Origin: Mobula birostris
Taxonomy: Eukaryota
Reading direction: 5' to 3'
NCBI RefSeq assembly: GCF_030028105.1
Contig: NC_092381.1
Location: 41,579,474 to 41,643,473 of the forward strand
DNA: 64,000 bases
In this document: in pieces, positions 1,695 to 48,799 of the stretch
How the letters are laid out: the number at the start of each line of letters is the position of its first letter
Numbering within the stretch: position 1 is the first letter of the stretch
Program-made: the position numbers and the translations under genes
The notes under the pieces: model-generated
The model's input: the letters and a program-made list of their open reading frames with translations, nothing else
Databases searched by the model: none
What the model was told of the DNA's origin: nothing

Positions 1695-1900
1695 CAGCAC
1701 ATACAAAATGCTGGAGGAACTTAGCAGGCCAGGCAGCATCTATGGAAAAGAGTACAGTTGATGTTTCGGGTCCTTATGAAGGGGCTCGGCCCACGGTGTC
1801 GACTGTTAACTCTTTCCCATAGATGCTGCCTGGCCATTGAGTTCCTCCAGCATTTTGTGTCTTTTGCTTGGATTTCCAGCATCTGCAGATTTTCTTGTTG
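1695..1900. mobile_element. Short Penelope-like (PLE) terminal-repeat palindrome
   Basis: Inverted arms (CAAAATGCTGGAGGAACT... / ...AGTTCCTCCAGCATTTTG); exact 12-bp TSD CTGAGTCTTAAA at 1683-1694 and 1901-1912; degenerate hammerhead at 1771-1805. Confidence 0.8.
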
Positions 1901-2445
1901 CTGAGTCTTAAAGGAGTGTTACCTTTAAAAGACAGTATATGCCAATCACAATGGTGAGTGATTATTGATTAAAGTCTGTCACGGTGAGAGGGAAGAATAA
2001 TCTTAACTCCAGTATATTCCTAACGGAAATCAAGTGACTGAGCAAATCTTTTCAGTCAGAGACTGGAAGCTACCCTATGGGTTATTTTTGGGTATAATTA
2101 AATTAAAATCACAATGCCATACCAGGAGAATAAGGCCGCTAGTGTCATAATAAGGGAGTTAAATTCAGACTGTGAATCTGGTTAGTTCTGCTGGATGTCC
2201 TTGAATTCTGATTTACATCACTCACCTTTCTGATCTCTGCATACTCTGACCCTGCCATGATTAATGATCTTTGTTCAGCAAAGAGTGGGAAGATGGACAA
2301 ATAAGGAGAAACAACTCAAAATGCTAAAAACTAAAAAAAAATCAAACAGCTCTGAAAATATGTATTAGACCAGTTAGGTTTTATAAAGAGAAAGAACGGG
2401 TTCCCTCTATCAGAGCAGAAGCATGAAAAGTAACAAATATACAGG

Positions 2446-2589
2446 CAAAAACAAGAGAAAATCTGCAGATGCTGGAAATCTGAGCAACACATACAAAATG
2501 CTAAAGGAACTCAGCAGCCAAGCAGCATCTATGGAAAGGAGTACAGTCGATGTTTCTGGCTGAAACCCTTCAGCAGGACTCAAGGACTC
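2446..2589 (-). mobile_element. PLE terminal-repeat fragment with degenerate hammerhead motif (2545-2580)
   Basis: Matches the 3' end of the PLE family; probable TSD AATATACARG at 2436-2445 and 2590-2599. Confidence 0.7.
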
Positions 2590-3309
2590 AATATACAAGA
2601 AAGTTAAATATTCTGAGGAAAAGAGGCAAAAAAAGCAAAGAGTAAACAACAGATACATCAGCCATTGACTGGGCCTTCATACTGTATGATAAAAAGGTAT
2701 TACGCCAATTGTTCTTGAAGTATAAAGGCAACTAAATTAAAGAAAAACTCTCAACCGCCTACGGAGAGTGGCCTTGGTATTTGCCTAATTGTGTCCTATT
2801 GTTTAGGATTATCACATAATAAGTTCATATTATTGTGAATAAAATGCAGAGCTTATCAAAAGTGTAAGTCATTAAAGGGAATGTTCAGACTTGACACCAA
2901 ACAACCAAATGGAGAAGCTGCTAATTCCTTTGAAGTCAGTATTAGCAGCCTTAGTATAGAATAAGGGACACAGAGATGTCAAATTGGAATTGGAGAGCGA
3001 TCACACTGGTGAAGATGATGAAGAAAATGATTGGCAAGTCTAAAGATATGCTTTGGTCACCAATGCCATTTAAGGGAATGTGAGACATTGCCACTTAGGG
3101 CAACTACTGTTAGCATAAAAAAATCTAGAACTAGATGTAATTAAGATCATAGGTAAAATAATTATTGCTCACTTCATATATCATATCCAATATGGTATAA
3201 AATAATTAAGCTCCTATAGGGAGAAGTGTAGGAATGAGAAATGAAGGAAACTGGGATGTACTTAGGCTGATAGAACATGACACATCGTCAGGTCCAACTG
3301 TCACACATA

Positions 3310-3846
3310 CACTCATTGGCTACTTTTGTAGTTACAGGAGTGGAGCCCAGTGTGATCTGCTGCTTCTGTAACCTACCCACTTCAAGACTTGATATTTTGT
3401 GCATTCAGAGATGCTGTTCTGCACACCACTCTTGTAATGTGTGGTTATTTGAGTTACTGTTGCCTTCTTGTCAGCTTGAAGCCGTCTGGCCATTCTTCTC
3501 TGGCCTTTCTCAAGACATGGTATTTTCACCCACAGAACTGTTGCCACTGTTTTGTTTTTTGTTTTTTGTATCATTCTCTTGAGATTCTAGAGACTGTTGT
3601 CCATGAAAATCACAGGAGATCAGCTCTTTCTGGGGTACAAACCAACCCATCCAGCATCAACAATCATTCCATGATCAAAGTCACTTAGATTGTATTTCTT
3701 CCCAATTCTGATGCTTTGTCTGAGCAACAACCTCTTGACTGTATCTGCATGCTTTTATGCATTGAGTTGCTGCCACATAACTGACTGATTGGAAATTGGC
3801 ATTAATGAGCAGGTGTACAGGTGTACCTAATAAAATGGCTACTATA
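3310..3846 (-). mobile_element. Internally deleted Tc1-type DNA transposon
   Basis: TA-CACTCATTGGCTACTTT start and GTGTACCTAATAAAATGGCTACT end (imperfect TIRs); ORF 3332-3574 encodes a Tc1 HTH-like peptide (ARRLQADKKATVTQITTHY...ISECT...GYRS...PLL). Confidence 0.75.
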
Positions 3847-4888: not shown

Positions 4889-4929
4889 GTATGGTCATAC
4901 ACTTTAGTAGAAGGAATAAAAGCATAGAA

Positions 4930-5650
4930 AATTCAAAAATCAAAGGTGCAAAGGGGCTTGTGCAAGATATCTTGTAGGCTCACTTGCAGCCTACACCTCA
5001 GGCTGAAATCCTTCAGCAGGACGGAAGAAAAAAAGCTAAGGAATAAATTTAAAAGGTGGAGGGAGGGGACAGAGAGCCACCAGGTGATAGTTGGATGGGG
5101 AGGGATGAAGTAAAGAGCTGGGAAGTTGTTTGGTAAGATGAGGTGAGAAATGGAAAAGGGGATGGGAAATGGGGGTGGTGGTGTTTGGGGCATTATCGGA
5201 AGTTAGAGAAATTAACGTTGATGGTTCTGGTCTTGTACTTGCTGGAGTTTAAAAGAATGACGGGAGATCGCATTGAAACTTAAAGAATATTGAAAGGTCC
5301 AGATAGAGTGAATGTAGGGAGGATGTTTCCTACACTGGGTGAGTCTAGGACAAGAGGCACAGCCTCAGACAAGTGGGATGTCCATTTAGAACAAAGATAA
5401 GGAGGAATTTCTTTAGTCAGAGGGGTAGTGAATCTGTGGAATTCATTGCCACAGGCAGCTGTGGAGGCTAAGTCATCGAGTATATTTAAAACAGGGGTTG
5501 ATTGGCTCTTGATTAGTTAAAGTGTCAAAGGTTACGGGGAGAAGGCAGAAGAATAGGTTTGAGAGGGATAAGAAATCAGCCATAATAGGATGGCGGAGCA
5601 GACTTGAATGGTCTAATTATGCTCCTATATTTTATGGTCAGATGGTCTTA
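4930..5650 (+). mobile_element. Decayed CR1 3' fragment interrupted by a - strand PLE repeat fragment (~4996-5222)
   Basis: CR1 RT C-terminal and 3' UTR motifs (GTGAATCTGTGGAATTCATTGCCACAG); purine-rich PLE repeat in the middle. Confidence 0.65.
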
Positions 5651-6351: not shown

Positions 6352-6640
6352 CCCTTATAGAATTCATAGATCATTGCCTAAAAAAATGAGATATGGAATA
6401 AAATTCACTCTCACAGAATTTGTGTGAAAAAAGTAAATGATTCAACACTGTTGTTTTCAACTTGTGTTTCTTGATGACTATGCAGATTTGTGTTATGATG
6501 CAACCTATTTTCTATGAATGCAACCTGCACTGAAGTCGCCTGCAACAACAGGAATTCTGCAGATGCTGGAAATTCAAGCAACACACATCAAAGTTGCTGG
6601 TGAACGCGGCAGGCCAGGCAGCATCTGTAGGAAGAGGTAC

Positions 6641-6676
6641 AGTCGACGTTTCAGGCCGAGACCCTTCGTCAGGACT
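6641..6676 (-). ncRNA. Minimal type I hammerhead ribozyme motif (intact core)
   Basis: Reverse complement reads AGTC CTGACGA AGGGTCTCGGCCT GAAA CGTC GACT. Confidence 0.7.
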
Positions 6677-7096
6677 AACTGAAGGAAGAGTGAGTAAGGG
6701 ATTTGAAAGTTGGAGGGGGAGGGGGAGATCCAAAATGATAGGAGAAGACAGGAGTGGGAGGGATAGAGCCAAAAGCTGGACAGGTGATAGGCAAAAGGGG
6801 ATACGAGAGGATCATGGGACAGGAGGTCCGGGAAGAAAGACAAGGGGGGGGGGACCCAGAGGATGGGCTCTCACTCTCCTTTGTCCCTCTGAATATACCG
6901 CTTGCCCATCCTCTGGGTCCCCCCCCACCTTGTCTTTCTTCCCGGACCTCCTGTCCCATGATCCTCTCGTATCCCCTTTTGCCTATCACCTGTCCAGCTC
7001 TTGGCTCTATCCCTCCCCCTCCTGTCTTCTCCTATCATTTTGGATCTCCCCCTCCCCTTCCAACTTTCAAATCCCTTACTCACTCTTCCTTCAGTT

Positions 7097-7132
7097 AGTC
7101 CTGACGAAGGGTCTCGGCCTGAAACGTCGACT
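7097..7132 (+). ncRNA. Minimal type I hammerhead ribozyme motif (intact core; predicted cleavage after C7128)
   Basis: Stem I AGTC/GACT, core CTGACGA (7101-7107), stem II, GAAA (7121-7124), loopless palindromic stem III ACGT, GUC triplet. Confidence 0.7.
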
Positions 7133-9308
7133 GCACCTCTTCCTACAGATGCTGCCTGGCCTGCTGCGATCACCGGCAACTTTGATGTGTGTTGCTGAAG
7201 TCGCCTGTATTCTTTGTACCTTCAGTGGAATCACCATTTTCACCAAAATAAAATAACTTTTGATGCATTAAGAATAAACAAAACCTTCACATGTCTGTAA
7301 CCTCACTGGATTAAGTTCTGCCATTTACCTCCAGAACCCATGTGGCTCCAGTTGTCTTCTGTTTCCCCAGCTAACTGTACTGCTGGATAAGCATCCTGTC
7401 TTCATTTTCCATGCAGAGGTCAATACATTTCAGAGGTACATTTAGCCTTGTAAAACCTGGCAAGGGCAACCTCTTTAATTCTAACACATGCCTACTTGTG
7501 TCACTAATGGGCTAGGGCCCATGTTAGCTTTGATCATAATTTTTTTTTGATTAAAAGGCTTAAATGAAATAGCTTTTCAAAAGCTTTTAAATTATTCTGG
7601 GCACAATTCCCATTCTAGGAAGGATATATGTTTCTAAAGTATCTGGAGTAAGATTTTGCCTTAGGAGTACTACCTAGTAAAGCTTCTACTTAATTTTACA
7701 CTTGCTGAGCTCCATTTAGCCTAAACATTCAAGACTAGTAAGATCAAAGAAGATATCTTGGCACTTGTAAAAGATGACTGAGAGGTGCTGTTTTTGGAGT
7801 GTGTCTGTGATGCAAACTGAAGTCATTTTCCCACTAAATACAGGACGTGGTGTATCCTGTTCAAAAGAAACTTTTTTTTTGTAGCATGTTTACTTTGGCT
7901 TTGCACAGGCAGTGCACACTGGGATGTAGTTAGGGTAAAGGTGAAAACATCCTATTCAATCTCAGGTTATGTTTACAAGGATGTGACTTCTTGATATGTG
8001 GTTCACTCAGTTACATGAATATGTAATGGCACTGTGTGTGACTAATTAAATTTAGGATACTCAAGCCAATCAAAAGCATTTCCTGTTCACGTGTATTCAT
8101 GGCAGCCATGTGGGCCTCACACTGTTCAACTTCACATTTTTGACAAGTTCATTTTTCCCAAGCTATACTTTACTCAGTTAGATATTTTTAAGCTACTTCA
8201 CCATCAGCACAGCCATGTGCTATTTCATCTCATTTCTGAAGGAACTGCATTGCTCGGTAAACTCCTGCCTAAAGCCCATGTCATTAATGTAGATTTTCAA
8301 GGGTAGTGCCTTGCCTGCCTTCCAGTACACAGTTTTAACTGGTTTTATCAATTTTAATTTCTTCATATGTGAGTTAACAAATCATTCCTCTTCCATGCAC
8401 ACAAATGCTTTGGTATTCCAGCAATTTAGTAATCCATTGCAAAGTTTTGTTAGGCTCCAAGTGCAAACTTGCACATTTGAACAGATGTAGCTTATATGGT
8501 CCCTCGAGCAGATCATGATGTGTTTGCACTGCAGCTCCAATTTCCTGCCATTTTCTGTATTACTTAGTACGCTTAATTATAATGTTGACCTTGACCTTCA
8601 AAGGTTCTGTTGACACATCACCTGCTCCTGAATAGATGTCAATAAATTGGTAACTGCACTCTCTTGTTCTAAATTCTGAATTCAGAGGAAATAGCTTTTC
8701 TGTATCTGCCTTATGAAATCCATTTATTATCCTGGATAGCCCGATCTTCTCAATCCATAAATTCAAAGGAACTCAGTCTGTGTTTATTCAGTTTACCCCG
8801 GTGAAATTCAACTGAATGTGTACTGTAACACCTCCAAATGTAGCATGTCTTTCCTGTCCTCAAAAAAAAACAATGCATTGGTTCAAATACTATCTGCCAA
8901 GACCCTGTGCAAGTGAACTATACCTTCCACACGTTTATGTTCCAGCTTCCCTGAGATAATGGGCAACATTAGTCTTTTCAAGTCCTCCCTGTGCCTGTGC
9001 CTTCAATCCTAGTGATTTGTGTGCCTGTATTTGTTTTTTCACAGCAATTCTCAAATATTTTTGATCAACGAACCATAATTCAGACAGATTGACAATTTCA
9101 GGCTCTTGCCTACCTAAATATGGAGTATATGGAGGAATTTAAGGTGGGGGGTTATATGGGAGTCAGGGTTTGAGGGTCGGCACAACATTGTGGGCTGAAG
9201 GGCCTGTACTGTGCTGAACTATTCTATGTCTATGTCTAAATTAGAAAACATTGGTAGATTCATGATATGAAAGAGATGCATTGCAGACTGCTTCAATAAC
9301 ATCTTGTT

Positions 9309-10003: not shown

Positions 10004-10018
10004 TCAGTAAACCTCCAT

Positions 10019-12400: not shown

Positions 12401-12636
12401 TTCGAAGCAATGAGTGAGATAGCAAGATCTGAGCAGAGAGGCAGCCAATTAAATACAAGCCTCGTTGGAGTGTATCATACTTCAAAGCAGCGAGTGAGAG
12501 AGTGTGATCTAAGCAGAGCGGCAGCCACTTAAAACAAGTCTCATTGAGAGCAAGTCATAATTCAAAGCAATGACTGAGAGAGCGGGATCTGACCAGAGTG
12601 GCAGCCATTTAAAAGCAACAAATCTCATTGGGAGTG
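12401..12636 (+). repeat. Three tandem 80-bp units in the CR1 5' region
   Basis: TTCRAAGCA starts at 12401, 12481 and 12561; each unit contains GATCT.A.CAGAG.GGCAGCCA.TTAAA. Confidence 0.85.
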
Positions 12637-15663: not shown

Positions 15664-17070
15664 GAGGTAGCTAAAGAGATTGTGGAGGCATTAGTAGTGA
15701 TCTTTCAAGAATCACTAGATTCAGGAATGGTTCTGGAGGACTGGAAATTTGCAAATATCACTCCATTCTTTAAGAAGGGAGGGAGGCAGAAGAAAGGAAA
15801 TTATAGGCCAATTAGCCAAACTTCAGTGGCTGGGAAAATGCTGGAGTCCATTATTAAGGATGACCTTTTGAGGTACATGGAGGTTCATGGTAAATTAGGC
15901 CAAAGTCAGCATGATTTCTTTTGGGAGAAATCTTGCCAAATTTTTGGAATTCTTTGAGGAACTAATAGGCAGAATCAACAAAGGAGGGGGGATCAGTGGA
16001 TGTTATTTATTCTGATTTTCAGAAGACCCTTGACAAGCTGCCACACATGAGACTTCTTAACAAGATAGGAGCCCATGGCATTACAGGAAAGATAGAAGAT
16101 AGGAGGCAAAGAATGGTAAGATATCAGGGAGTCTGCAGAAGGAGATATTAGGAGAATGGGCAAAGAAGTAACAGATGGAATTTAGTGTCGGGATGTGCAT
16201 GGTTATCCACTTTGGTAGAAGGAATAAACCCATAGATTATTTTCTAAATGGGGAGAATATTCAAAATTCAGAGGTGCAAAGGGACTTGGGAGTCCTTGTG
16301 CAGGATTCCTTCCAGGTTAACTTGCAGGTTAAGTCGACGGTAAGGAAGGCAAACACATTCATTTTGAGAAGACTGGAATATAAGAGCAAGAATGTAATGC
16401 TGAGGTGTTATAAGGCATTGGTCGGACTGCACTTGGAGTATTGTGAGCAGTTTTGGGATCCTTATATTAAAAAAAAGATGTGCTAGCATTGGAGGGGGTC
16501 TAGAGGAGATTCACAAGAATGATTCTGGGAATGATTGGGTTAATATAAGAAGCGCTTTTGATGGCTCTGGGGCTGCACTCGAATTTAGAAGAATGAGGTA
16601 GGATCTCCTTGAAACCTATCGAATATTGAAAGATCTAGATAGAATAGATGTGGAGAGGATATTTTCTATAGTGAGAGAATCAATGACAAGGGAGCTCAGC
16701 CTTAGAATAGAGGGACATCCATTTAGAATAGAGATGAGGAGGAATTTCTTCAGCCAGAGGGTGTTGAATCTGTGAACTCATTGGCACAGGTGGCTGTGGA
16801 GACCAAGTATGAGTATATTTAAGATGGGTGTCAATAGGCTCTAGAATAGTGAGGGCATTAAAGATTATGTGGAGAAGGTGGGAGAATAGTGTTGAGAGGG
16901 ATAATAATTCAGCCATGATGAAATGGTGGAGCAGACTTGATGGGCTGAGTGGCCTAATTCTGCTCCTATGTATTATTGTCTTATGATTTTATGATGAGCC
17001 AGGTAACAAATAATCAGGATTCCAAGAAGTTGGATAGCAGATAACCAGCACTGTACATATTTACTGTACA

Positions 17071-17174
17071 GTCTTGACGAAGGGTCTCGGTTCAAAACAT
17101 AGACTCTTTATTCCTTTCCATTTTGTCTGTGTTACTTTGGATTTCCAACATCTGCAGAATCTCGCTTTTTTATG
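17071..17174 (+). mobile_element. Short PLE 3' fragment with degenerate hammerhead (17070-17105)
   Basis: AGTCTTGACGAAGGGTCTCGG...; TSD ATTTACWGTACA at 17059-17070 and 17175-17186. Confidence 0.7.
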
Positions 17175-17235: not shown

Positions 17236-20190
17236 AAAGACCATAAGACATAGGAGCAGAATTAGGCCACTTGGCCCATCGAGTCTGCTCTGCCATTCCA
17301 TCATGGCTGATTTATTGTCCCTCTCAATCCTATTCTCCTGTCTTCTCATCTCTGTTCTAAATGGACATCTCTCTATTCTGAGGCTGTGCTCTCTGGTCCT
17401 TGACTCACCCACAATAGAAAACATCTCTACATGCACTCTATTGAAGCCTTTCAACATTTGATAGGTATCAATGAGATTTCTGCTCATTCTTTTAAACTCC
17501 AGCAAGTACAGTCACAGAACTATCAAACGCTTCTCATATATTAACGCTTTCATTCCTAGGATCATTCTCATGAACCTCCTCTGGGCCCTTTCCAATGCTA
17601 GTATTTTTTCTGAGACAAGAGGCCCAAAATTGCTCACAAAATTCCAAATGCAATCTGACTATTGGCTTATAAAGCCTCAGCATCACATCCTTTGTAGTAT
17701 GTTCTAGTCCTATCAAAATGAATGCTAACATTGCATTTGCCTTCCTCACTTCCAACTCAACCTGCAAGTTAATCTTTAGGGAGATCCTGCACAATGACTT
17801 CCAAGTCCTTTTGCAACTCTGAGTTTTGAATGTTCTCCCCATTTATAAAAATATTCTATGTCTTTATTCCTTCTACCAAATTGCTTGATCTTATACTTCA
17901 TTACACTACGTTCCATCTGCCAATTCTCCCAATCAGTCTATGCCTTTCTGCAGACTCCATGCTTCCTCAACACTACCTGCCACTCCACCTGTCTTTGTAT
18001 GGTCTGCAAGCTTGGTCACAAAGCCTTCAATTCCATCATCCAAATCGTTGACATATAATGTGAAACAAAGTGGTCCCAACCTCACCCTTAATAATGGATT
18101 CCAACATTTTCCCAGCCACTGAACTCAAGTTAACAAGCCTATAATTTTCCTTTCTCCTGTCTCTCTCCCTTCTTAAAGAGTGGAGAGATATTTGTAATCT
18201 TCCAGTCCCCTATTACTACCTCTCCAGTATCAATTTCCAGTGTTTCAATATCCACTCTTGCCTCTCTTTCACTATTCATATATCTGATAAAACTTTTTGT
18301 ATCCTCTTTGATATTATTGGTTAGCTTACCTTCATATTTTATCCTTTCTCTCCTTACAGCTTTTGTAGTTTCCTTCCATTGGTTTTGAAAAGCTTCAAAT
18401 CGTCTAACTTCCCAAGCAACACACAAAAAATGCTGGAGGAACTCAGCAGGCCAGGCAGCATCTATGGAAAAGAATAAACAGTCGATGATTTGGGCCGAGG
18501 CTCTTCATCAGGACTGGAATAAAAAATGGGAGGTCAGGGTAAGAAGGTAGGGGGAAGGGGAGGAAGAAGTACAAGGTAGTAGATGATAGGTGAAACTGGG
18601 AGAGGGGGAAGGGGTGAAGTAAAGAGCTAGAAAGTTGATTTGTGAAAGCGAAGAAGGGCTGCAGCAGGGGAATCTGATAGGAGAGGGTAGAAAACCGTGG
18701 AATAAAGGGAAGGAGGAGGAGCACCAGAGGGAGATGATGGGCAAGTAAGGAGATAAGATGAGCGAGGGAAATGGGAATGGGGAATGGTGAAGGGGGGAGG
18801 GGGGTCGACAGTTAATGGAAGTTTGAGAAATTGATGTTCATGCCATCAGGTTGTAGACTACCCAGACGGAACATAAGGTGTTACTCCTCCACCCTGAGTG
18901 TGGCCTCATTGCAGCAGTAGAGGAGACCATGGACTGACATGTCGGAATGGGAATGGGAATGGGAAGTAGATTTGAAATGGCTGGACACTGGGAGATCTCG
19001 CTTTTTCAGGGGAATGGAGTGTAGGTGCACAGTGAAGCGGTCTTCCAGTCTATATCAGGTCTCACCGATATACATGAGGCCACACTGGAGCACTGGATAC
19101 AGTAGATGACCCCAAAAGAGTCACGGGAGAACCGTCGCCTCACCTGGAAGGACTATTTGGGGCCCTGAATGGTAGTGAGGAAGGAGGTGTAAGGGCAGGT
19201 GTGGCACTTGTTCCACTTACAAGAGTAAGTGCCAGGAAGAAGATCAGTGGAGAGAGGTGAGTGGACAAGGGATCCCTACAGAAAGTGGAAAGTGGGATGG
19301 GAGAGAAAGGTGTGTTTGGTGGTGTAATCCCATTGGAGATGGCAGAAGTTATGAAGCCTAAACTCTCAGTTCTCACTAATTTTTGCAATATTATATGGCT
19401 TCTTTTTGATTTTATGCTGTCTTTTACTTCCTTTGTCAGCTATGGTTACCTCATCCTCCCTTTAGAAGATTGCTTCTTTTTTGGTATGTATCTATCCTGC
19501 ATCTTCTGAATCACTTCCAGAAACTCCAGCTATTGCTGTTCTGCTTTCATTCCTGCTAATATCCCCTTGCAATCCACTTTGGAACACTCCTCTCTCATTC
19601 CTTTGTAATTCCCCTCACTCCACTGTAATACTGATACATCTGACTTCAGCTTCTCTCTCTCAAACTACGGAATAAATTCTATCATGATCACTGCCTCCAA
19701 GGGTTCCTTCACCTTAAGTTCCCCAATTAAAGCAGTGCCATTACACAACCCCCAATCTAGAGTTGTCTATTCTCTAGTGGGCTCAACCACAAGCTGCTCT
19801 AAAAAGCCATTGTAGGCATCCTACAAATTCCGTCTCTTGGGATCCAGCAGCAACCTCATTTTCCCAATCTACCTGCATATTGAAATCCCCATGACTATTG
19901 TAACATTGCACTTTTACATGCCTTTTCTATCTCCTGTTGTCATTCTTATCCCACATCCTGGCTACCGTTTGGAAGCCTGTACATATATAACTCCCATCGG
20001 GGTCTTTTTAACCTTTCAGTTTCTGAACTCCATTTACAAGGATAATACATCTTATGATCCTACGTCACCTCAATCTGAGGACTTGATTTCTTTTTTTACT
20101 AAAAGAGCTACAGCATGTTCTCTGCCTACCTGCTTCTCCTTTTGATACAAGGTATGACATTGGATGTTAAACTCTCAACTATGATCTTCT
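17236..20190 (-). mobile_element. Decayed 5'-truncated CR1 LINE (APE-RT remnants)
   Basis: Minus-strand ORFs RLYKPIVRLHLEFCEQFW, WKITNISPLFKKG; tail at 17236-17255; interrupted by a PLE. Confidence 0.85.
18416..19358 (-). mobile_element. 5'-truncated Penelope-like element with GIY-YIG endonuclease remnant
   Basis: Minus strand ~19150-19020 translates to GVIYCIQCS..CGLMYIGET.YRLEDRF..H (frameshifted); followed by terminal repeat and degenerate hammerhead at 18480-18515. Confidence 0.85.
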
Positions 20191-25152: not shown

Positions 25153-25336
25153 TTTTGAAGCATGCACTAATCAATTTCCAATTCTTGCCATTTTGAAGAT
25201 ATTTTAATACACTCTAAGGTATCTGAGATTGATTGGGGTGCCCAATATTATTGGCTGTTTTAATGGTCTTGAAAAGATGGTGGTGACATATCCTCATGAT
25301 CATCACTGATGATAAAGAACAGCATTATATTTCTGA

Positions 25337-26433
25337 TGAACGCAGTAGGCCAGGCAGCATCTCTAGGAAGAGGTGCAGTCGACATTTCGTGCCGACACAC
25401 TTCGTCAGGACTAACTGAAAGAAGAGCTAGTGAGAGATTTGAAAGTGGGAGGGGGAGGTGGAGATCCGAACTGATAGGAGAAGACAGGAGGGGGAGGGAT
25501 GGAGCCAAGAGCTGGACAGTTGATTGGCAAAAGGGATATAAGAGGATCATGGGACAGGAGGCCCAGGGAGAAAGAAAAGGGGGAGGGAGGGAAAACCCAG
25601 AGGATGGGCAAGGGGTATAGTGAGAGGGACAGAGGGAGAAAAAGGAGAGAGGGAGAAAGAATGTGTGTATATAAATAAATAACGGATGGGGTACGAGGGG
25701 GAGGTAGGGCATTAGCGGAAGTTTGAGAAGTCAATGTTTATGCCATCAGGTTGGAGGCTACCCAGACGGAATACAGGGTGTTGTTCCTCCAACCTGAGTG
25801 TGGCTTCATCTTTACAGTAGAGGAGGCCGTGGATAGGCATATCAGAATGGGAATAGGACGTGGAATTAAAATGTGTGGCCACTGGAAGATCCTGCTTTCT
25901 CTGGCGGACAGAGAGTAGGTGTTGGAGGAACGACGCCTTATATTCCGTCTGGGTAGCCTCCAACCTGATGGCATGAATATTGACTTCTCAAACTTCCGCT
26001 AATGCCCCACCTCCCCCCTTACCCCATCTGTTATTTATTTATATACACACATTCTTTTTCTCTCTCTCCTTTTTCTCCCTCTGTCCCCCTCACTATACCC
26101 TTTGCCCATCCTCTGGTATTTTCCCCACGCCCCCTTTTCTTTCTCCGTAGGCTGTCCTGTCTCATGATCCTCTCATATCCCTTTTGCAAAGCAACTGTCC
26201 AGCTCTTGGCTCCATCCCTCCCCCTCCTGTCTTCTCCTATCATTTCAGATCTCCACCTCCCCTTCCCACTTTCAAATCTCTTACTAGCTCTTCTTTCAGT
26301 TAGTCCTGATGAAGGGTCTTGGCCCAAAATGTCGACTGTACCTCTTCCTAGAGATGCTGCCTGGCCTGCTGTGTTCACCAGCAACTTTTATGTGTGTTGC
26401 TTGAAATTCCAGCATCTGCAGATTTCCTCGTGT
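25337..26433. mobile_element. PLE inverted-repeat insertion (~455-bp arms) with GIY-YIG C-terminus
   Basis: Arms ~25337-25793 and ~25921-26377; exact 12-bp TSD TTATATTTCTGA at 25325-25336 and 26434-26445; peptide VATHFNS...RLEEQH..FRLGSLQPDGINIDF; hammerhead motifs at 25377-25412 (-) and 26302-26337 (+). Confidence 0.9.
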
Positions 26434-27727
26434 TTATATTTCTGAGTCAGGATTATGTGTTACTTGTAGAGAACTGAGGGTGATAGTAGGTATCCCACAC
26501 ATTTGTTCTTCTTGTCCTTCTTTGATGTGGTGACCTGAGGTTTGGGAGGTCCTGTAGTCAAGGCTAATAAATACAGTGCATTTTCTACTCAGTACATAAT
26601 CCAACAACTCTGTGCCTGCGATGGAAGGAATAAATGTTTAGGATGGTGGATGTTGTTGGACTGCACTCATTCAGGCAGGTGGAAATGATTGCATCACATT
26701 CCTGACTAGTACCTTCTGATACTTTGTGGTATCAGGAAGGGAGTCAGTTAGTACGTGATTTCAAGCGATTGACCTATTCTTGCAGACATAATATTTTTGT
26801 TGCTGCTTTCTGGTCTAAGATGACCCCTGGATTTTGATAGTGAGGGCTGAGCATACACATGTCAGTAATGCAGATTTAATACCCTTGTTGCTTTGTGTGA
26901 ATATTTGTGTGTTATTGACCAAATTTTCAATAAATCCATTATTTGGAACAGATGTAAAAGATAGGGAATTATAAATGCTAATTTTAGTTGCAAATAAGTT
27001 ATATCAGGCTGTGCACAGTAAACTATCAAATTCTATGAGATTTATTGAAGTGTTGTTGTAACTGGGGAATGGGCTGTTTGTATGATAATATCATCAACAA
27101 TTTCTCCCATTAAAAATCACATACTCAAAATGGCAGTATACAAAAGGTGCTGAGATGAAGCAGACATAAAAATTAACCTTAATGATTGGAAGTGCAATCC
27201 CAAACAGATTAATGTAATTATACATGTTGATGTCTACTTGGACTTCACTTTTTGTAGAAAGTAACAGCATTCTAGTCAAGTCATCAGCTTGTTTTCCATC
27301 GTGTAGAACAGACATATTTTATGTTCAACCTGGTGTTAGTTGGCAAAAAAAAAGCTTTTGAATAATGATCTATTTTGTCTTTAAATTTAATTTAAATGTA
27401 TGACATACTGTTTTACTCAAATGCAGGTTTTTTTACAGCCTACTTAAGAAGCTCAGTTGTTGGTAAAATGTGAGTTAGATTTTAAACCAGCCTCTGAATG
27501 TTCAGTCCAAAGGTAAGATTGTAGGTGTGCATAGTTCAGTGGTATGTCAAGAAGAGGAGCTTGTACAGTTTCTCCATTTTCCTAACACACATTACAACAA
27601 GAAAAATACATTTTCCACACAACATTTACCCTAATTAATTTTGGCAGAGAGTTTTAATAATTAACATCTAATGATTGTTTACATATTCTGTCTACTCTAA
27701 AATTTAAAAGCCTGCTTACTCAGCTTT

Positions 27728-27878
27728 TGGATCTCCCCCTCCCCCACCCACTTTCAAATCTCTTACTAGCCCTTCCTTCAGTTAGTCCTGACGAAGGGTC
27801 TCGGCCCGAAACGTCAACTGTACCTCTTCCTAGAGATTCTGCGTGGCCTGCTGTGTTCACCAGCACATTTGATGTGTG
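27728..27878 (+). mobile_element. Short PLE terminal-repeat insertion
   Basis: TSD TTACTCRGCTTT at 27716-27727 and 27879-27890. Confidence 0.8.
27784..27819 (+). ncRNA. Minimal hammerhead ribozyme motif (intact core, one stem I mismatch)
   Basis: AGTC CTGACGA A GGGT-CTCG-GCCC GAAA CGTC AACT. Confidence 0.65.
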
Positions 27879-28206
27879 TTACTCGGCTTTATTTTCAGAT
27901 TAATTAATTTGGACAACAAGAATTTGAAATTGACACAACTATTAAAAACAAAATCTATAGGAATCATAATAGTAAGCAGTGTAAATTTTCAGAATTAAAC
28001 ACTGGCTTGTCTCTTTGTAGATCTTACAGCTACAATGGGATACATTGATGGTAAAAATCTGAATTAATAGATTGCCTACAGTATTTAAGGACAATAGGAG
28101 AGCTTCATAGAATGAATATTAAATATAGGTCATGCATGTTTTAAGCCATAATGAATTGAATCATGCTTCATTCCACTTGTTGTGTAAACTCACGTCTTGC
28201 ACTTAC

Positions 28207-29362: not shown

Positions 29363-30637
29363 CAGAACTTCCAGCCTATTGTTAGGCCACACTTAGATCC
29401 CCTCCAGTTCACCTACCAGCCCCGACTAGGAGTTGAGGATGCCATCGTCTTCCTGCTGAACCGTGTCTACGCCCACCTGGACGAGCCAGCGAGCACTGTG
29501 AGGGTCATGTTTTTTTGACTTCTCCAGTGTGTTCAACACCATCCGCCCTGCTCTGCTGGGGGAGAAGCTGACAGCGATGCAGGTGGATGCTTTCCTGGTG
29601 TCATGGATTCTTGATTACCTGACTGGCCGACCACAGTACGTGTGCTTGTAACACTATGTGTCCGACAGAGTGATCAGCAGCACTGGGGACTGTCTTGTCT
29701 CCCTTTCTCTTCACCATTTACACCTCAGACTTCAACTACTGCACAGAGTCTTGTCATCTTCAGAAGTTTTCAGATGACTCTGCCATAGTTGGATGCATCA
29801 GCAAGGGAGACGAGGCTGAGTACAGGGCTACGGTAGGAAACTTTGTCACATGGTGTGAGCAGAATTATCTGCAGCTTAATGTGAAAAAGACTAAGGAGCT
29901 AGTGGTGGACCTGAGGAGAGCTAAGGCACCGGTGACCCCTGTTTCCATCCAGGGGGTCAGTGTGGACATGGTGGAGGATTACAAATACCTGGGGATACGA
30001 ATTGACAATAAACTGGACTGGTCAAAGAACACTGAGGCTGTCTACAAGAAGGGTCAGAGCTGTCTCTATTTCCTGAGGAGATTGAAGTCTTTTAACATCT
30101 GTTGGACGATGCTGAGGATGTTCTACGAGTCTGTGGTGGCCAGTGTGATCATGTTTGCTGTTGTGTGCTGGGGCAGCAGGCTGAGGGTAGCAGACACCAA
30201 CAGAATCAACAAACTCATTGGTGATATTGTGGGGATGGAACTGGACACTATGACGGTGGTGTCTGAAAAGAGGACGCTGTCCAAGTTGCATGCCATCTTG
30301 GACAATGTCTCCCATCCACTACATAATGTATTGGTTGGGCACAGGAGTACGTTCAGCCGGAGACTCATTCCACCGAGATGCAACACAGAGCGTCATAGGA
30401 AGTCATTCCTGCCTGTGGTCATCAAACTTTACAACTCCTCCCTTGGAGGGTCAGACACCCTAAGTCAATAGGCTGGTCCTGGACTTATTTCCATCTGGCA
30501 TAATTTACATATTATTATTTAATTATTTATGGCTTTATATTGCTATATTTATACTCTATTCTTGGTTGGTGCAACTGTAACGAAACCCAATTTCCCTCAG
30601 GATCAATAAAGTATGACTATGACTATGACTATGACTA
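29363..30637 (+). mobile_element. Rex1/Babar LINE, RT 3' half
   Basis: LDPLQFTYQ, VRVMFFDFSS.FNTI, LSPFLFTIYTSD, KFSDDSAIVG, YKYLG; (ATGACT)n tail. Confidence 0.92.
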
Positions 30638-30644
30638 TTTTATA

Positions 30645-38053: not shown

Positions 38054-38448
38054 CACAGGAAATTCTGCAGATGCTGTAGATTCAGAGCAAGACACACAAA
38101 ATGCTGGAATTATTCAGCAGGCCAGGCAGCATCTGTCAGGAAGAATAAGGAGTCAACGTTTCTAGCTGAGAGCCTTCATCGGGACCGGAAAGGAGGGGGA
38201 AGCAGCCAGAGCAAGAAGGTTTGGGAGAGTGGAAGGAAATCAAATTGGAAGGTTATAGGTGAAGCCAGGTGAGGGGGAAGATAGGTTGGTGGGGGTTGGG
38301 GAGGAATGGGAGGATGAAGTGAGAAGCTGAGAGGTGATTGGTGAAAAAGAAAAGGGATGAAAAAGAAGGAATCTGTTAGGAGAAGAGAGTTGACCATGGG
38401 AGAAAGAGAAGGAGAATGGGCACCAGAGGGAGATGATAGGCATGTACC
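38054..38448 (-). mobile_element. Older PLE terminal-repeat fragment with degenerate hammerhead (38151-38186)
   Basis: Similar to 18416-18750; 15-bp TSD TCAGRTTTTCACTTA at 38039-38053 and 38449-38463. Confidence 0.8.
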
Positions 38449-42900: not shown

Positions 42901-43150
42901 AGCCCTTATACAATTATGCTGAAAAGTGGCCCTTTTTAATGCTTGCCCTGGATTTGTCGGCCTGCCACTTTTACTTTTCTCCATAGCACTTTTTGCTTCT
43001 ACCCTCACTTTACACCCCTCTGTCTCTCTGCACTGGTTCCCATCCCCCTGTTGTGAACTAACCTCCTCACGTCTAGCCTCTTTAATTTGATTCCCACCCC
43101 CCAACCATTCTAGTTTAAAGTCACCTCAGTAGCCCCCGCTAATCTCCCTA
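39977..43150 (-). mobile_element. Young CR1 LINE, truncated in the last codons of ORF1
   Basis: GRLAGATEVTLN* ORF1 end at ~43150-43110; complete ORF2; 3' stem-loop and (TTTCTATG)n tail. Confidence 0.95.
40073..43104 (-). pseudogene. CR1 ORF2 (APE endonuclease + reverse transcriptase) with a single frameshift near 41473
   Basis: 545-aa ORF (NARSIRNK, GITETWL, YRPP, GDFN, SDH) plus 454-aa ORF ([33 protein letters not shown]); adding one base restores FQ.SLDSGLVPEDWRVANV. Confidence 0.93.
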
Positions 43151-43176
43151 TCAAGCAGGACTTACTTAAAACTAAC

Positions 43177-43328
43177 ACTCACAACACGCTGGAGGAACTC
43201 AGCAGGTCGGGCAGCATCCGTGGAAACGATCAGTCGTCGTTTCCACGGATGCTGCCCGACCTGCTGAGTTCCTCCAGCATGTTGTGAGTGTTGCTTTGAC
43301 CCCAGCATCTGCAGATTGTTTTGTGTTC
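43177..43328. mobile_element. Short PLE palindrome of a divergent subfamily
   Basis: 56-bp arms 43174-43229 and 43237-43292, 7-nt loop; TSD ACTTAAAAMTAAC at 43164-43176 and 43329-43341. Confidence 0.8.
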
Positions 43329-45944: not shown

Positions 45945-46220
45945 CATAACAGAGTAGATGGATTGTTTTCGCTGGTTGAGGTGTCTAGGATAACCTAGAA
46001 CAAAAATGAGGAGGAATGTCTTCACTCATGAAATTAAGTATCTAAGATGGCTGGGGAGGCTTGGTCCCTGAGTATTTTCAAGATGGTTATTCATAGATTT
46101 TTAAATAATAAAAAAGATCAAAGGATATTGACTGCAAGAAAAAGGCGCTGCTGCACTAAATGATCACCTGTAATCTTATTGCATGACAGAGCAATTACAA
46201 GAGGCTGACATGTTCTTATG
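45945..46220 (+). mobile_element. Very old CR1 3' fragment
   Basis: Degenerate ATGAGGAGGAATGTCTTCACTCA...ATAGATTTTT motifs. Confidence 0.5.
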
Positions 46221-46350
46221 CTTCGTGCATGAAGTCTAACCTCTAAGGTCTTTAAACTCATGAGATGGGGGACCAAGTGATTATTGCCTGGAGTAAAGTG
46301 GCACTGGTGCTGTCAACAGTTCTTCTGCTTACAAGACACTAGATATTCTT

Positions 46351-48732
46351 TAAAAACGCAAACACGAGGAAACCTGCAGATGCTGGAAATTCAAACAACA
46401 CACATAAAATTTGCTGGTGAACGCAGCAGGCCAGGCAGCATCTGTAGGAAGCGGTACAGTCAACGTTTTGGGCCGAGACCCTTCGTCAGGACTAACTGAA
46501 AGAAGAAAAAGTAAGAGATTTGAAAGTGAGAGGGGGAGGGGGAGATCCAAAATGATAGGAGAAGACAGGAGGGGGAGGGATGGAGCTAAAAGCTGGAAAG
46601 TTGATTGGCAAAAGGGATACGAGGCTGGAGAAGGGAGAGGATCATGGGACAGGAGGCCGAGGGAGAAAGAAAGGGTGGGGGGAAGCCCAGAGGATGGGCA
46701 AGGAGTTATAGTGAGAGGGACAGAGGGAGAAAAAAGAGGAAAAAAGGGGGAATGGAAAAAAACATAATAAATAAATAAACAAACAAACAAACAAACAAAC
46801 AAATAAATAAATAAATAAAACGAATAAATAAATAAATAAATAAATAAATAAGGGATTGGGTATGAAGGGGAGGTTGGGCGTTAATGGAAGTTAGAGAAGT
46901 CAATGTTCATGCCATCAGGTTGGAGGCTACTGTGAGGGGATCCAGGAGTACCCCTATTAACTGCAGAGTGACATTTATCATTGATGGTTTGTTTGGGAAG
47001 GAGAGAGAGACAGAGTTATTTACCACCGATATGTTGCTTTTGAAAAGAGAGAGAGGGAGATACGAAGATCAACAGTTGGACTGTCACTTTAAGGCATTGG
47101 AAGTAACCTTGGATTTCTACTGAGTTTGGAGTTGGAGACAGCACTGAGCAGCTCGAAAGTTGCTATAGTGACCGAAGACTGGTTGTTGATGTTACTTTCG
47201 AGGACTTGTTGCCTGCTTGTGCACTTTTTTGCAGACAAGGGAAGGAGGGCCTCTTAATGACAGGTGATGGTCAGCCTGGTGAAATAAATGGGAGGTCAGA
47301 TGATACAGACCACAGACACATGATCTGGACACTGAATGAGCATTGTTGTGCCCGCAGAGAAAGTGGGTTTTGGAGGATCAATCAGGCGGATTGATCCAAA
47401 TTGCTATTCCAACAGTGAAGAAGGGGTTGACTGGTGGGGAGTTGTTTATGTGTCCACCCTCGCCTGGGTGATAGCTCCACCACAGGAAAACCGGTCCCCC
47501 TAGTTAAAGTCACAGTCGGTGACTTGTAAAGGATTTCGGAGGACGACGAGAAGATCGACAGCATCAGCTTACCTGAAGATTCAACTCACTCTCTCTCTCT
47601 CTCTCTCTCTCTCCATCACTACTCAACTCAATACCACGAACTGAACTGAACTTTACTCAACATCGTAAAACTGTATCTTTTTACCCCTAGACTTAAAGAA
47701 GCTTGGTTTTCATACATATATGTATATATTCCACACTTACTTTTATATATAATCATTGCTAACCTGTTTGATTTATCTACATTTATATTACTGTATTGTG
47801 TAGTTACTAATAAATATTAGTAGTGTATAGCAATACGAGACTCCAAAGTGCTTTCCATCTCTGCTGGTTCTTTACTCCCGTCACAGGGTACGTGACACTA
47901 CCCAGATGGAATATAAGGTGTTGTTCCTCCACCCTGAGTGTGGCTTCATCTTGACAGCAGAGGAGGCCGTGGATAGACATATCAGAATGGGAATGGGACA
48001 TAGAATTAAAATGTGTGGCCACGGGGAGATCCTGCTTTCTCTGGTGGACAGAGCGTAGGTGTTCAGCGAGACGTTCTCCCAGCCTGTGTCAGGTGCTCCC
48101 AATGCGGCCTTCTATATATTGGCGAGTCCACATATTTTAATTCTACATCCCATTCCCATTCTGATATGTCTATCCACAGCCTCCTCTACTGTCAAGATGA
48201 AGTCACACTCAGGTTGGAGGAACAACACCTTATATTCCATCTGGGTAGCCTCCAACCTGATGGCACGAACATTGACTTCTCTAACTTCCGTTAATGCCCC
48301 ACCTCCCCTTCGTACCCCATCCTTTATTTATTTATCTATCTATCTATCTATCTATCTATTTATTTATTTATTATTATGTTTTTTTTTTCTTTCCCTTTTT
48401 TTTTATCTCTCTTTTTTCTCCCTCTGTCCCTCTCACTATAGCTCCTTGCCCATCCTCTGGGCTCCCCCCCCCATTGCTTTCTCCCTAGGCCTCCTGTCCC
48501 ATGATCCTCTCCCTTCTCCAGCCTCGTATCCCTTTTGCCAATCAACTGTCCAGCTCTTGGCTCCATCCCTCCCCCTCCTGTCTTCTCCTATCATTTTGGA
48601 TCTCCCCCTCCCCCTCCCCCTCCCACTTTTCAATCTCTTACTTTCTCTCCTTTCAGTTAGTCCTGACAAAGGGTCTTGGCCCGAAATGTTGACTGTACCT
48701 CTTCCTATAGATGCTGCCTGGCCTGCTGCGTT
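46351..48732. mobile_element. PLE inverted-repeat insertion with GIY-YIG fragments, interrupted by a solo LTR
   Basis: Exact 14-bp TSD CACTAGATATTCTT at 46337-46350 and 48733-48746; ORF 48013-48294 RCSQCGLLYIGES...RLEEQHLIFHLGSLQPDG; hammerhead motifs at 46458-46493 (-) and 48659-48694 (+). Confidence 0.9.
46931..47897 (+). mobile_element. Solo LTR (967 bp; Gypsy- or ERV-like)
   Basis: TGT...ACA termini; 4-bp TSD CTAC at 46927-46930 and 47898-47901; AATAAA near 47809; host PLE sequence resumes exactly. Confidence 0.85.
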
Positions 48733-48799
48733 CACTAGATATTCTTAACTACTTGGGTAAGGTGAATTAATTATCCTTCTTCCTTTCCTCTTGACTGGT

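What the first reader, a model, noticed from the sequence alone, without database searches (positions are those of the whole stretch)
1695..48746. Dispersed family of 36-nt minimal hammerhead ribozymes carried by Penelope-like elements
Seen: at least 11 copies of AGTC-CTGAyGA-A-GGGTCTCGGCCC-GAAA-CGTC-GACT, at 2545, 6641, 7097, 17070, 18480, 25377, 26302, 27784, 38151, 46458 and 48659, plus a broken one near 1771. Each sits at the same position near the element 3' end, downstream of a GIY-YIG coding end where that is retained. The motif has the hammerhead core (CUGANGA...GAAA...UH), stems I and II, and a loopless stem III that is just the palindrome ACGT. Established: PLE terminal repeats in many eukaryotes carry minimal type I hammerheads, some cleaving as dimers through a palindromic stem III. 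Inference: this genome is saturated with such ribozymes (about one per 5-6 kb here), and copies at 6641, 7097 and 27784 keep an intact core and may cleave as dimers or in trans, including inside host pre-mRNA. I cannot tell whether this specific family is already described.
Basis: partly seen in the sequence, partly recalled or inferred. Interest (0 to 1): 0.8.

Follow-up and report, generated by a model that had tools for sequence, protein, structure and literature searches.

The report
Decayed Penelope retrotransposon tails with hammerheads
The repeated 36-base motif is real and is the already described minimal hammerhead ribozyme found near the end of Penelope-like jumping genes; here most copies are mutated relics, so the finding is correct but ordinary.

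Summary
Observation confirmed. All 12 listed sites hold the 36-nt motif. A covariance model adds one degenerate 13th copy at 4988-5023(-). The core pattern occurs 4 times against 0.09 expected.

The motif fits the 'min-HHR' of Penelope-like element (PLE) terminal repeats, as defined by Cervera & de la Pena 2014 (PMC4209133). It lies 46-100 nt from the 3' end of 5'-truncated copies. Five of these keep the C-terminal end of a GIY-YIG endonuclease ORF about 300 nt upstream. Several copies are head-to-head inverted pairs, a known PLE signature.

Four of 12 copies keep every invariant core base (7097, 6641, 27784, 25377). The other eight are hit at core positions, mostly by CpG decay (window CpG o/e 0.26). 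Between diverged subfamilies the hammerhead is the best conserved segment (0.78 identity, against 0.35 just upstream). That points to selection on the elements, not on the host.

Cleavage could not be tested. The two best copies sit in one 652-bp palindromic insertion that folds as a long hairpin. Trans cleavage of host pre-mRNA has no support.

The kind is known. First readers of this scan noted the same thing on other pieces of this genome.

The parts
7097..7132 (+). min-HHR copy with all core bases kept and G10.1-U11.1 wobble. Predicted cleavage is between 7128 and 7129.
6641..6676 (-). min-HHR copy with the same 36-nt motif as 7097, on the opposite arm of the palindromic insertion
27784..27819 (+). 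min-HHR copy with intact core and perfect stem II. G1.1 is changed to A, giving a C-A mismatch in stem I beside the cleavage site.
25377..25412 (-). min-HHR copy with intact core. Stem II pair 10.2-11.2 is changed on both sides to U-A. C15.2 is changed to U, so stem III reads AUGU.
26302..26337 (+). min-HHR relic: G12 changed to A, C15.2 changed to U
46458..46493 (-). min-HHR relic: G12 changed to A, position 17 is U
48659..48694 (+). min-HHR relic: G8 changed to A
2545..2580 (-). min-HHR relic of a diverged subfamily: A6 changed to C
18480..18515 (-). min-HHR relic of a diverged subfamily: G12 changed to A, A15.1 changed to U
38151..38186 (-). min-HHR relic of a diverged subfamily: U4 changed to C
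17070..17105 (+). min-HHR relic: C3 changed to U, G12 changed to A. Its tail has a 36-nt deletion.
1692..1869 (.). Head-to-head pair of two tails joined inside the hammerhead. The broken HHR is at about 1769-1804 on the + strand.
4988..5023 (-).
6543..7194 (.). One insertion made of two 5'-truncated tails head to head. The arms are 277 nt long and 97% complementary. It is flanked by an identical 13-bp target duplication at 6530-6542 and 7195-7207. Only the - arm has the extra 36-nt tail extension.
25330..26435 (.). Head-to-head pair. The - arm reaches into the GIY-YIG coding end (25715-25930). The + arm starts at about 25922.
46360..48758 (.). Head-to-head pair. The - arm is split into 46360-46941 and 47894-48103 by about 950 bp of other DNA. 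The + arm runs from 48049 to about 48758. Both arms keep the GIY-YIG coding end.
27725..27890 (+). Solo 5'-truncated tail of 166 nt that carries the 27784 hammerhead
18415..19356 (-). 5'-truncated PLE copy. It holds the linker with a C-x4-C-x2-C motif and the GIY-YIG end (18818-19356, with stops and a frameshift), then about 300 nt of 3' UTR, the hammerhead and the tail.
43169..43297 (.). Tiny head-to-head pair of tails from another subfamily. The arms are 61 nt long, 95% complementary and 7 nt apart. The - arm starts at C17/G1.1, the predicted cleavage site.

Best explanation
These are copies of the terminal module of Penelope-like retrotransposons: 3' UTR, minimal type I hammerhead, then a tail of 46-100 nt. 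The zinc-finger-like linker suggests the Neptune or Nematis clades. The copies were scattered by target-primed reverse transcription as 5'-truncated insertions, often as head-to-head pairs.

In the source elements the RNA motif reads: stem I AGUC/GACU; core CUGAYGA; one unpaired A; stem II GGGU-CUCG-GCCC; GAAA; stem III ACGU; C17. This is the published 'min-HHR'. As a monomer it has no stable stem III. Two copies can pair through the ACGU palindrome into a double hammerhead, each core cutting after C17.

The cleavage step is inferred from published work, not shown here. It would happen in transcripts of tandem master elements and is probably helped by the element's own protein.

The copies in this window are dead relics. 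The motif holds 5 CpGs in 36 nt, and the genome is strongly CpG-depleted, so 8 of 12 copies have lost a core base.
For: Motif anatomy:
- All 13 invariant core positions are in the majority sequence, and 4 of 12 copies keep them all.
- The unpaired A between positions 9 and 10.1 is invariant in 12 of 12 copies.
- G10.1-C11.1 is G-C in 8 copies, G-U in 2 and other in 2. In total 93.8% of 96 stem cells pair, against 15.6-49.0% when the partner is slid.
- One pair is changed on both sides (U-A in 25377).
- These are the features that Cervera & de la Pena list for PLE min-HHRs, including dual motifs on opposite strands 100-700 bp apart (PMC4209133, text parts 1-2 read).

PLE context:
- tblastn with proteins found from the 93-aa fragment maps C-terminal endonuclease remnants about 300 nt upstream of five hammerheads: 18480, 25377, 26302 (26 aa only), 46458 and 48659.
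- Of 10 homologues scanned, 4 match Pfam GIY-YIG: P0071 at 34.7 bits (cut-off 22.6), and P0003, P0075 and P0081 below the cut-off. P0075 also has a weak RVT_1 match.
- 18 of 30 Atlas hits are GIY-YIG clusters.

Insertion signatures match the passages of PMC8557442 read:
- Inverted 5'-truncated partners.
- A 36-nt tail extension on one arm only.
- A 13-bp target duplication.
- A contig in run X19 joins the two flanks with 14 letters where the window has 670.

Selection at the element level:
- Between subfamilies A and B the matched fraction is 0.35 just upstream, 0.78 in the hammerhead and 0.63 in the tail. Random segments give 0.23-0.30.
- In family A, non-CpG cells changed 3/182 in the hammerhead against 81/1385 in the flanks (p 0.014).
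Against: - No PLE reverse transcriptase domain lies in the window. The RT ORFs present are LINE-type, with an APE endonuclease.
- Pfam does not recognise the window's own endonuclease fragments: 0 GIY-YIG hits among 4 fragments at E up to 10. The assignment therefore rests on homologues.
- Rfam finds no hammerhead: 0 hits at gathering score in the window and none at E up to 10 in 27700-27900.
- Covariation is thin. One compensated pair; 53 of 500 shuffles reach the observed paired share.
- Overall change rates in the hammerhead and the flanks do not differ: 17/252 against 106/1460.
- Folding does not favour the active form. The monomer hammerhead fold has -6.0 kcal/mol against an MFE rod of -10.0, in which GACG of the core pairs with CGUC. 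The double hammerhead has -9.5 against a dimer MFE of -28.3.
- No cleavage evidence was obtained. The runs laid are contigs, and no begin or end places were listed.
- In Anolis, hammerhead mutants did not affect insertion in vitro, and no RNA-seq ends were seen at the site (PMC11167929, passages).
Confidence: 0.85

Rival explanations
1. The motif is kept in PLE termini for a job other than self-cleavage. Examples would be a binding site or folding unit for the element's RT/EN protein, part of the pLTR promoter region, or a selfish passenger on PLEs. The hammerhead likeness would then be vestigial.
For: - The MFE rod sequesters the core.
- The conserved block continues about 100 nt past the hammerhead, into a tail with a 9-bp long-range helix.
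- Published in vitro activity is low (PMC4209133).
- Insertion in vitro does not need the ribozyme (PMC11167929).
- PLE clades without a hammerhead proliferate well, and the ribozyme 'may simply parasitize PLEs' (PMC8557442, passages).
Against: Every invariant catalytic base is kept between subfamilies whose neighbouring UTR is no longer alignable. A plain binding site would not need that. The Anolis PLE hammerhead does cleave when the protein is present, and C3/G8 mutants behave as expected (PMC11167929, passages).
Confidence: 0.12
2. The short copies are a separate non-autonomous family, either retrozyme-like or SINE-like. They would be mobilised by PLE proteins and would not be 5'-truncated copies of autonomous PLEs.
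For: - Several copies are only 70-300 nt long: 27725-27890, 2512-2580, 17070 onward, and 43169-43297.
- 2545 and 17070 share no upstream similarity with the other copies.
- A 2026 preprint derives animal retrozymes from PLE pLTRs (10.64898/2026.07.22.740005; abstract and Results part 1 read).
Against: - Longer members of the same subfamilies run without a break into the GIY-YIG coding end. The lengths therefore form a truncation series.
- No tandem array of hammerhead units exists in the window: 9 TRF rows, none with the motif.
Confidence: 0.08
3. Some intact copies act on host RNA, cutting pre-mRNA in cis or in trans.
For: Four copies keep the core. Copies are dense in the window (12-13 in 64 kb).
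Against: - Individual copies show no conservation beyond neutral decay: 17/252 cells changed against 106/1460 in the flanks.
- The two best copies are locked in a palindrome.
- 27784 has a mismatch beside the cleavage site.
- The stems are only 4 bp long.
- Published activity is low.
- I did not establish that the window lies in a gene.
Confidence: 0.03

Closest known systems
min-HHR of metazoan Penelope-like elements (Cervera & de la Pena 2014, PMC4209133)
   Same: - Type I topology with a short stem I of 4 bp.
[quoted passage not shown]
- A G10.1-C11.1 pair.
- No loop 3, and a palindromic 15.2-16.2.
- Location in the PLE terminal repeat.
- Many solo copies from truncated elements, and pairs on opposite strands a few hundred bp apart.
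   Different: Stem II here is 4 bp with a CUCG loop. The Schistosoma families in that paper have 7-8 bp. The figures and supplements that show the fish, coelacanth and frog motifs were not available to me, so I could not compare sequences directly.
Poseidon element of Anolis carolinensis (PAc) and its hammerhead (PMC11167929)
   Same: A hammerhead lies in the pLTR close to the site where reverse transcription starts inside the RNA, which gives the genomic 'tail'. Both target strands are cut and extended, which would explain head-to-head pairs. Targets are AT-rich.
   Different: In PAc the hammerhead overlaps the ORF start. Here it lies about 300 nt after the endonuclease stop, and no ORF start was seen after it in the copies at hand. 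The clade is probably different, because a C-x4-C-x2-C linker is seen at 18480.
Non-LTR retrozymes of animals (PMC7229834, listing only; 10.64898/2026.07.22.740005)
   Same: Type I hammerheads related to PLE pLTRs, in vertebrates other than birds and mammals.
   Different: Retrozymes are tandem arrays that give circular RNAs. Here there are no tandem arrays, and the copies continue into PLE coding sequence.
Rfam hammerhead families
   Same: The catalytic core consensus is the same.
   Different: No Rfam model matches, even at E up to 10 in a 201-nt slice. The cause is probably the missing helix III and loops.

Membership tests
Hammerhead ribozyme (core) | Invariant C3 U4 G5 A6 N7 G8 A9, G12 A13 A14, A15.1-U16.1, H17 | tested here: met
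   All are present in the majority sequence of alignment A1. Four of 12 copies keep them all (7097, 6641, 27784, 25377). Eight of 12 have at least one core change.
Hammerhead ribozyme (core) | Three helices around the core, supported by covariation | tested here: inconclusive
   Stems I and II pair in 93.8% of 96 cells, against 15.6-49.0% for slid controls. Only 1 pair is changed on both sides, and 53 of 500 shuffles reach the paired share. Stem III exists only between two molecules.
Hammerhead ribozyme (core) | Site-specific self-cleavage after position 17 | not testable with these tools
   The runs were held as contigs, and no begin or end places were listed. Folding energies do not favour the active fold.
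PLE min-HHR (Cervera & de la Pena 2014) | [quoted passage not shown] | tested here: met
   A in 12 of 12 copies; the column is invariant.
PLE min-HHR (Cervera & de la Pena 2014) | G10.1-C11.1 pair | tested here: met
   G-C in 8 copies, G-U in 2, other in 2 of 12.
PLE min-HHR (Cervera & de la Pena 2014) | No loop 3, and palindromic 15.2-16.2 | tested here: met
   ACGU in 5 of 12 copies (7097, 6641, 27784, 46458, 38151). The rest differ mostly by C-to-T or G-to-A changes at the CpG.
PLE min-HHR (Cervera & de la Pena 2014) | Lies in the terminal repeat of a Penelope-like element | tested here: met
   The motif is 46-100 nt from the copy's 3' end. It is about 300 nt downstream of endonuclease remnants at five loci.
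Penelope-like element | C-terminal GIY-YIG endonuclease | tested here: met
   The window's fragments hit 95 proteins. Of 10 scanned, 4 match Pfam GIY-YIG: P0071 at 34.7 bits (above cut-off), and P0003, P0075 and P0081 below cut-off. Atlas: 18 of 30 hits are GIY-YIG clusters. Pfam on the fragments themselves gave 0 of 4.
Penelope-like element | Telomerase-like reverse transcriptase upstream of the endonuclease | tested here: inconclusive
   There is no PLE RT in the window, because all copies are 5'-truncated. One homologue, P0075, has a weak RVT_1 match (17 bits, below cut-off) next to GIY-YIG.
Penelope-like element | Insertion signatures: 5' truncation, an inverted 5'-truncated partner, a 30-40 bp tail at one end, target duplication | tested here: met
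   Five head-to-head pairs: at 1692-1869, 6543-7194, 25330-26435, 43169-43297 and 46360-48758. A 36-nt extension on one arm and a 13-bp duplication at 6530-6542 and 7195-7207.
Non-LTR retrozyme | Tandem array of hammerhead-bearing units | tested here: not met
   TRF gave 9 rows, none containing the motif. The nearest same-strand copies, 26302 and 27784, are separate insertions 1482 nt apart.

The most novel reading that the evidence does not exclude
The genomic copies may carry a fossil record of hammerhead cleavage in vivo. The tiny head-to-head insertion at 43169-43297 has one arm that starts at C17/G1.1, the predicted cut. That is what is expected if reverse transcription ran to the 5' end of a ribozyme-cleaved RNA.

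If a genome-wide tally of the 5' ends of these copies shows a spike at G1.1, it would be in vivo evidence that PLE hammerheads process the template RNA. RNA-seq in Anolis did not show this, and the literature calls the point unclear.
Probability: 0.15. Interest if true: 0.6.

Novelty: new member of a known kind. Interest (0 to 1): 0.2.

Why it matters
The finding matters little on its own. It shows that this CpG-depleted genome is loaded with PLE tails, and that the standard RNA family library (Rfam) does not flag their hammerheads. Annotators will therefore meet this motif again and again.

Two points are useful:
- The motif is CpG-dense, so it decays fast. Counts of 'intact ribozymes' will greatly understate past PLE activity.
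- The abundance of copies makes a genome-wide test of 5' ends at the cleavage site feasible. That test bears on the open question of what PLE hammerheads do.

Tried and rejected
**Searches that found nothing**
- Rfam at gathering score on the whole window, and at E up to 10 on 27700-27900, gave no hammerhead family. I take this as a limit of the models, not as evidence against the motif.
- Pfam on four of the window's endonuclease fragments gave nothing relevant. I went through homologues instead.
- The large ORFs at 40073-43104(-) and 29695-31987(+) are LINE-type (APE endonuclease plus RT), not PLE.
- TRF found no tandem arrays of the unit.
- A search of paper texts for a 20-nt tail string and a 28-nt hammerhead string found 0 papers. 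Supplements are closed and Repbase is not on hand, so the family may still be listed there.
- A search for 'hammerhead ribozyme' plus 'Penelope' plus 'shark' gave one paper, which uses 'shark' only for the shape of the motif.
- Lunse, Weinberg & Breaker (RNA Biol 2016/17) is not held. I saw only its title in the reference list of PMC6765202 and that review's summary.

**Tests that were inconclusive**
- RNA evidence: the runs found are held as contigs, and their RNA label is a guess. They show abundance and an apparent empty site, but no RNA ends.
- The tail's long-range helix, AGAUGCUG... pairing with ...CAGCAUCU, is invariant. It shows no covariation either way.

**Not attempted**
- I did not determine the organism or whether the window lies in a gene.

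**Rejected**
- Chance resemblance.

Full report
**Observation**

All 12 are present at the stated places and in a consistent orientation (alignment A1).

The core pattern CTGAYGA-N13-GAAA occurs 4 times, against 0.09 expected; 0 of 100 shuffles reach 4. A 28-nt core string with up to 3 mismatches occurs 4 times, against 0.00 expected. A 20-nt box about 15 nt downstream of the motif occurs 12 times, against 0.00 expected.

A covariance model built from the 12 copies finds them again, by construction, at 53.6-78.6 bits. It adds one degenerate copy at 4978-5033(-) (16.6 bits, E 0.015); the next hit has 11.6 bits. Read on the - strand, that 13th copy has CUGCUGA and a broken GAAA.

**Anatomy of the motif**

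In alignment A1 the motif reads:
- stem I AGUC/GACU
- core C3-A9 = CUGAYGA
- one unpaired A
- stem II GGGU, loop CUCG, GCCC
- G12 A13 A14
- A15.1 C15.2 G16.2 U16.1 with no loop
- C17

The unpaired A is invariant in 12 of 12 copies. Stems I and II pair in 93.8% of 96 cells, against 15.6-49.0% when the 3' partners are slid. Only one pair is changed on both sides (U-A at 10.2-11.2 in 25377), and 53 of 500 column shuffles reach the observed paired share. The structure is therefore supported by conservation and register, and only weakly by covariation.

Four of 12 copies keep every invariant core base:
- 7097 and 6641, both with a G10.1-U11.1 wobble
- 27784, with a C-A mismatch at the stem I pair beside the cut
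- 25377, with AUGU in place of ACGU

The other eight each have at least one core change:
- G12 to A in 26302, 46458, 18480 and 17070
- G8 to A in 48659
- A6 to C in 2545
- U4 to C in 38151
- G5 to U, and a broken GAAA, in the copy at 1769-1804

**What carries it**

A self-comparison shows a unit of about 300 nt around the motif and a set of inverted repeats. One subfamily ('A') accounts for seven hammerheads:
- a head-to-head pair at 6577-6853 / 6920-7196, 97% complementary
- a pair at about 25330-26435
- a pair at about 46360-48758, whose - arm is interrupted by about 950 bp
- a solo 166-nt copy at 27725-27890

The other copies (1771, 2545, 17070, 18480, 38151) belong to more diverged subfamilies.

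Upstream of five hammerheads there are remnants of an ORF end: 18480, 25377, 26302 (26 aa only), 46458 and 48659.

Pfam does not recognise these short fragments (0 relevant hits among 4). A full HMMER search with the 93-aa fragment 48013-48291 found 95 proteins at E up to 0.001. Of 10 longer hits scanned:
- P0071 matches GIY-YIG above cut-off (34.7 bits)
- P0003, P0075 and P0081 match GIY-YIG just below cut-off; P0075 also has a weak RVT_1 match
- three are host-gene models with a PLE piece attached
- three have no relevant match (P0001 and P0032 none; P0004 only a weak RNase H match below cut-off)

tblastn with eight of the hits maps endonuclease remnants at 18818-19356(-), 25715-25930(-), 25922-26041(+), 47894-48103(-) and 48049-48340(+). 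It finds no PLE RT anywhere in the window. The protein atlas gives GIY-YIG clusters for 18 of 30 hits.

The 18480 copy also shows C-K-W-N-K-C-H-T-C just before the GIY-YIG part. A zinc-finger-like motif in the RT-EN linker is what PMC8557442 gives as the mark of the Neptune and Nematis clades (passage). I read it by eye and did not test the clade.

The big RT ORFs of the window are LINE-type and unrelated.

**Ends and insertion signatures**

Downstream of the hammerhead, all subfamilies share a tail of about 100 nt. The copies end at about +46, +66 or +100 nt after the hammerhead.

The 6543-7194 pair is flanked by an identical 13-bp duplication, at 6530-6542 and 7195-7207. Only its - arm carries the last 36 nt of the tail.

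One contig of run X19 lies on 6352-6534 and then on 7205-7280, with 14 of its own letters between, where the window has 670. That looks like an empty site, so the pair went in as one event. The 14 letters are more than the 5 a perfect empty site would leave, and the run's organism is coded, so I treat this as suggestive.

Three features are the published PLE signature (PMC8557442 passages): 5' truncation, an adjacent inverted 5'-truncated copy, and a 30-40 bp tail at one end only. PMC11167929 (passages) reports that the Anolis PLE protein cuts and extends both target strands and starts reverse transcription inside the RNA. That would produce exactly such pairs and tails.

**Match to the known family**

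Cervera & de la Pena 2014 (PMC4209133; I read text parts 1 and 2 of 4) define the min-HHR of PLE terminal repeats. [quoted passage not shown] They also report:
- a short helix I of 4-5 bp
- mostly solo motifs from truncated PLEs
- dual motifs on opposite strands 100-700 bp apart
- thousands of copies in coelacanth and Xenopus
- presence in fish Xena, Poseidon and Neptune elements

Every one of these features is met here. Stem II is 4 bp here, against 7-8 bp in their Schistosoma families. I could not see their figures or supplements for the vertebrate motifs.

Rfam's models do not detect the motif.

**Is the motif under selection?**

Between subfamilies A and B the matched fraction is:
- 0.35 in the 100 nt upstream
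- 0.78 in the hammerhead
- 0.63 in the next 65 nt
- 0.23-0.30 for random segments

Contigs in run X19 that match only 6639-6676 and diverge on both sides (72 and 97 loose ends) say the same.

Within subfamily A, non-CpG cells changed 3/182 in the hammerhead against 81/1385 in the flanks (p 0.014; the cells are not independent). CpG cells changed 14/70 against 25/75 (p 0.09). All cells together changed 17/252 against 106/1460, which is no difference.

The window's CpG o/e is 0.26, and the motif holds five CpGs. So the source elements conserve the hammerhead, while inserted copies decay at least as fast as their surroundings. That is the pattern of a function for the element, not for the host.

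**Would these copies cut?**

This was not testable here, and the indirect evidence is against much activity.
- In the nearest-neighbour model the monomer prefers a rod in which G5-A6-N7-G8 pairs with C15.2-G16.2-U16.1-C17: MFE -10.0, against -6.0 kcal/mol for stems I and II alone.
- The double hammerhead (-9.5) is far from the dimer MFE (-28.3), which is a stem II duplex. The model ignores tertiary contacts and proteins.
- The two best copies, 6641 and 7097, are on opposite strands of one palindrome. Either transcript holds one sense ribozyme and its complement, and the 652-nt RNA folds into a hairpin of about 290 bp at -628 kcal/mol (z -64).
- Published min-HHRs cleave poorly even as dimers (PMC4209133).
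- The Anolis PLE hammerhead cleaves only with the element's protein, is not needed for insertion in vitro, and leaves no visible RNA-seq ends (PMC11167929 passages).
- PMC8557442 calls the function 'still unclear'.

The runs I could lay are contigs of uncertain type. They show thousands of pieces on the repeat arms (9689, 7066, 18 and 18984 laid in X1, X5, X9 and X19) and almost nothing on the unique flank 7202-7500, but no begin or end places.

**A lead**

At 43169-43297 there is a tiny head-to-head pair of tails from another subfamily: arms of 61 nt, 95% complementary, 7 nt apart. Aligned to other tails, its - arm begins at C17/G1.1.

The pair at 1692-1869 is joined inside the hammerhead.

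This is two of about 11 insertion events, too few to weigh. A genome-wide tally of 5' ends would test whether templates are cut at the ribozyme site in vivo. The scan's note s1-894261 makes a similar claim on another piece of this genome. I saw its title before I noticed this pair, and I did not test it.

**Verdict**

The thing is a typical member of a kind described since 2014. First readers of this scan noted it on several other pieces of the same genome, and the palindrome at 6530-7207 on this window. The inference of active, host-directed ribozymes is not supported.

I found the exact sequences in no paper text. Supplements and repeat libraries were out of reach, so 'new member of a known kind' is the most I can claim.

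Noticed in passing
window 43169-43297: A tiny head-to-head pair of PLE tails with 61-nt arms, 95% complementary and 7 nt apart. It lies just upstream of the LINE ORF at 41467-43104(-). The - arm starts at C17/G1.1 of the hammerhead, the predicted cleavage site. This may be a footprint of a ribozyme-cleaved template.
   Followed up: partly
window 6530-7207: The 652-bp palindromic insertion has an identical 13-bp target duplication. A contig in coded run X19 joins the two flanks with only 14 letters between, which looks like an empty site. Flank identity is about 94-97%.
   Followed up: partly
window 7133-7194, 6543-6640, 26338-26435 and the other tails: The tail after the hammerhead is conserved across subfamilies. 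It holds an invariant long-range inverted repeat: AGATGCTG..., then about 50 nt, then ...CAGCATCT. RNAalifold pairs it as a 9-bp helix with an inner 4-bp helix. No covariation was seen. It might correspond to the stem-loop where PLE reverse transcription starts.
   Followed up: partly
window 2545-2590, 17060-17105, 1769-1775: Three copies seem to begin within a few bases of the 5' edge of the hammerhead. 2545 has a duplicated GAGTCCTT/GAGTCCTG at the junction. I could not tell flanking DNA from unalignable subfamily UTR.
   Followed up: partly
window 46942-47893: About 950 bp of unrelated DNA splits the - arm of the third head-to-head pair. It was not identified. (AATA)n and similar simple repeats lie at 46756-46851 and 48325-48375, inside the PLE 3' UTRs.
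   Followed up: no
window 40073-43104(-) and 29695-31987(+): LINE copies with an APE endonuclease and RVT_1. One RT fragment also matches ALKBH8_N. A further LINE endonuclease-like stretch abuts the 5' end of the truncated PLE at about 19400-20300(-).
   Followed up: partly
proteins P0006, P0034, P0041: Gene models of a 7tm receptor, a RecQ5-like protein and a NYAP-like protein in public protein sets carry a piece of PLE endonuclease. This is either exonised PLE or mis-annotation.
   Followed up: no
window 12401-12614: An 80-bp tandem repeat with 2.7 copies, unrelated to the finding.
   Followed up: no
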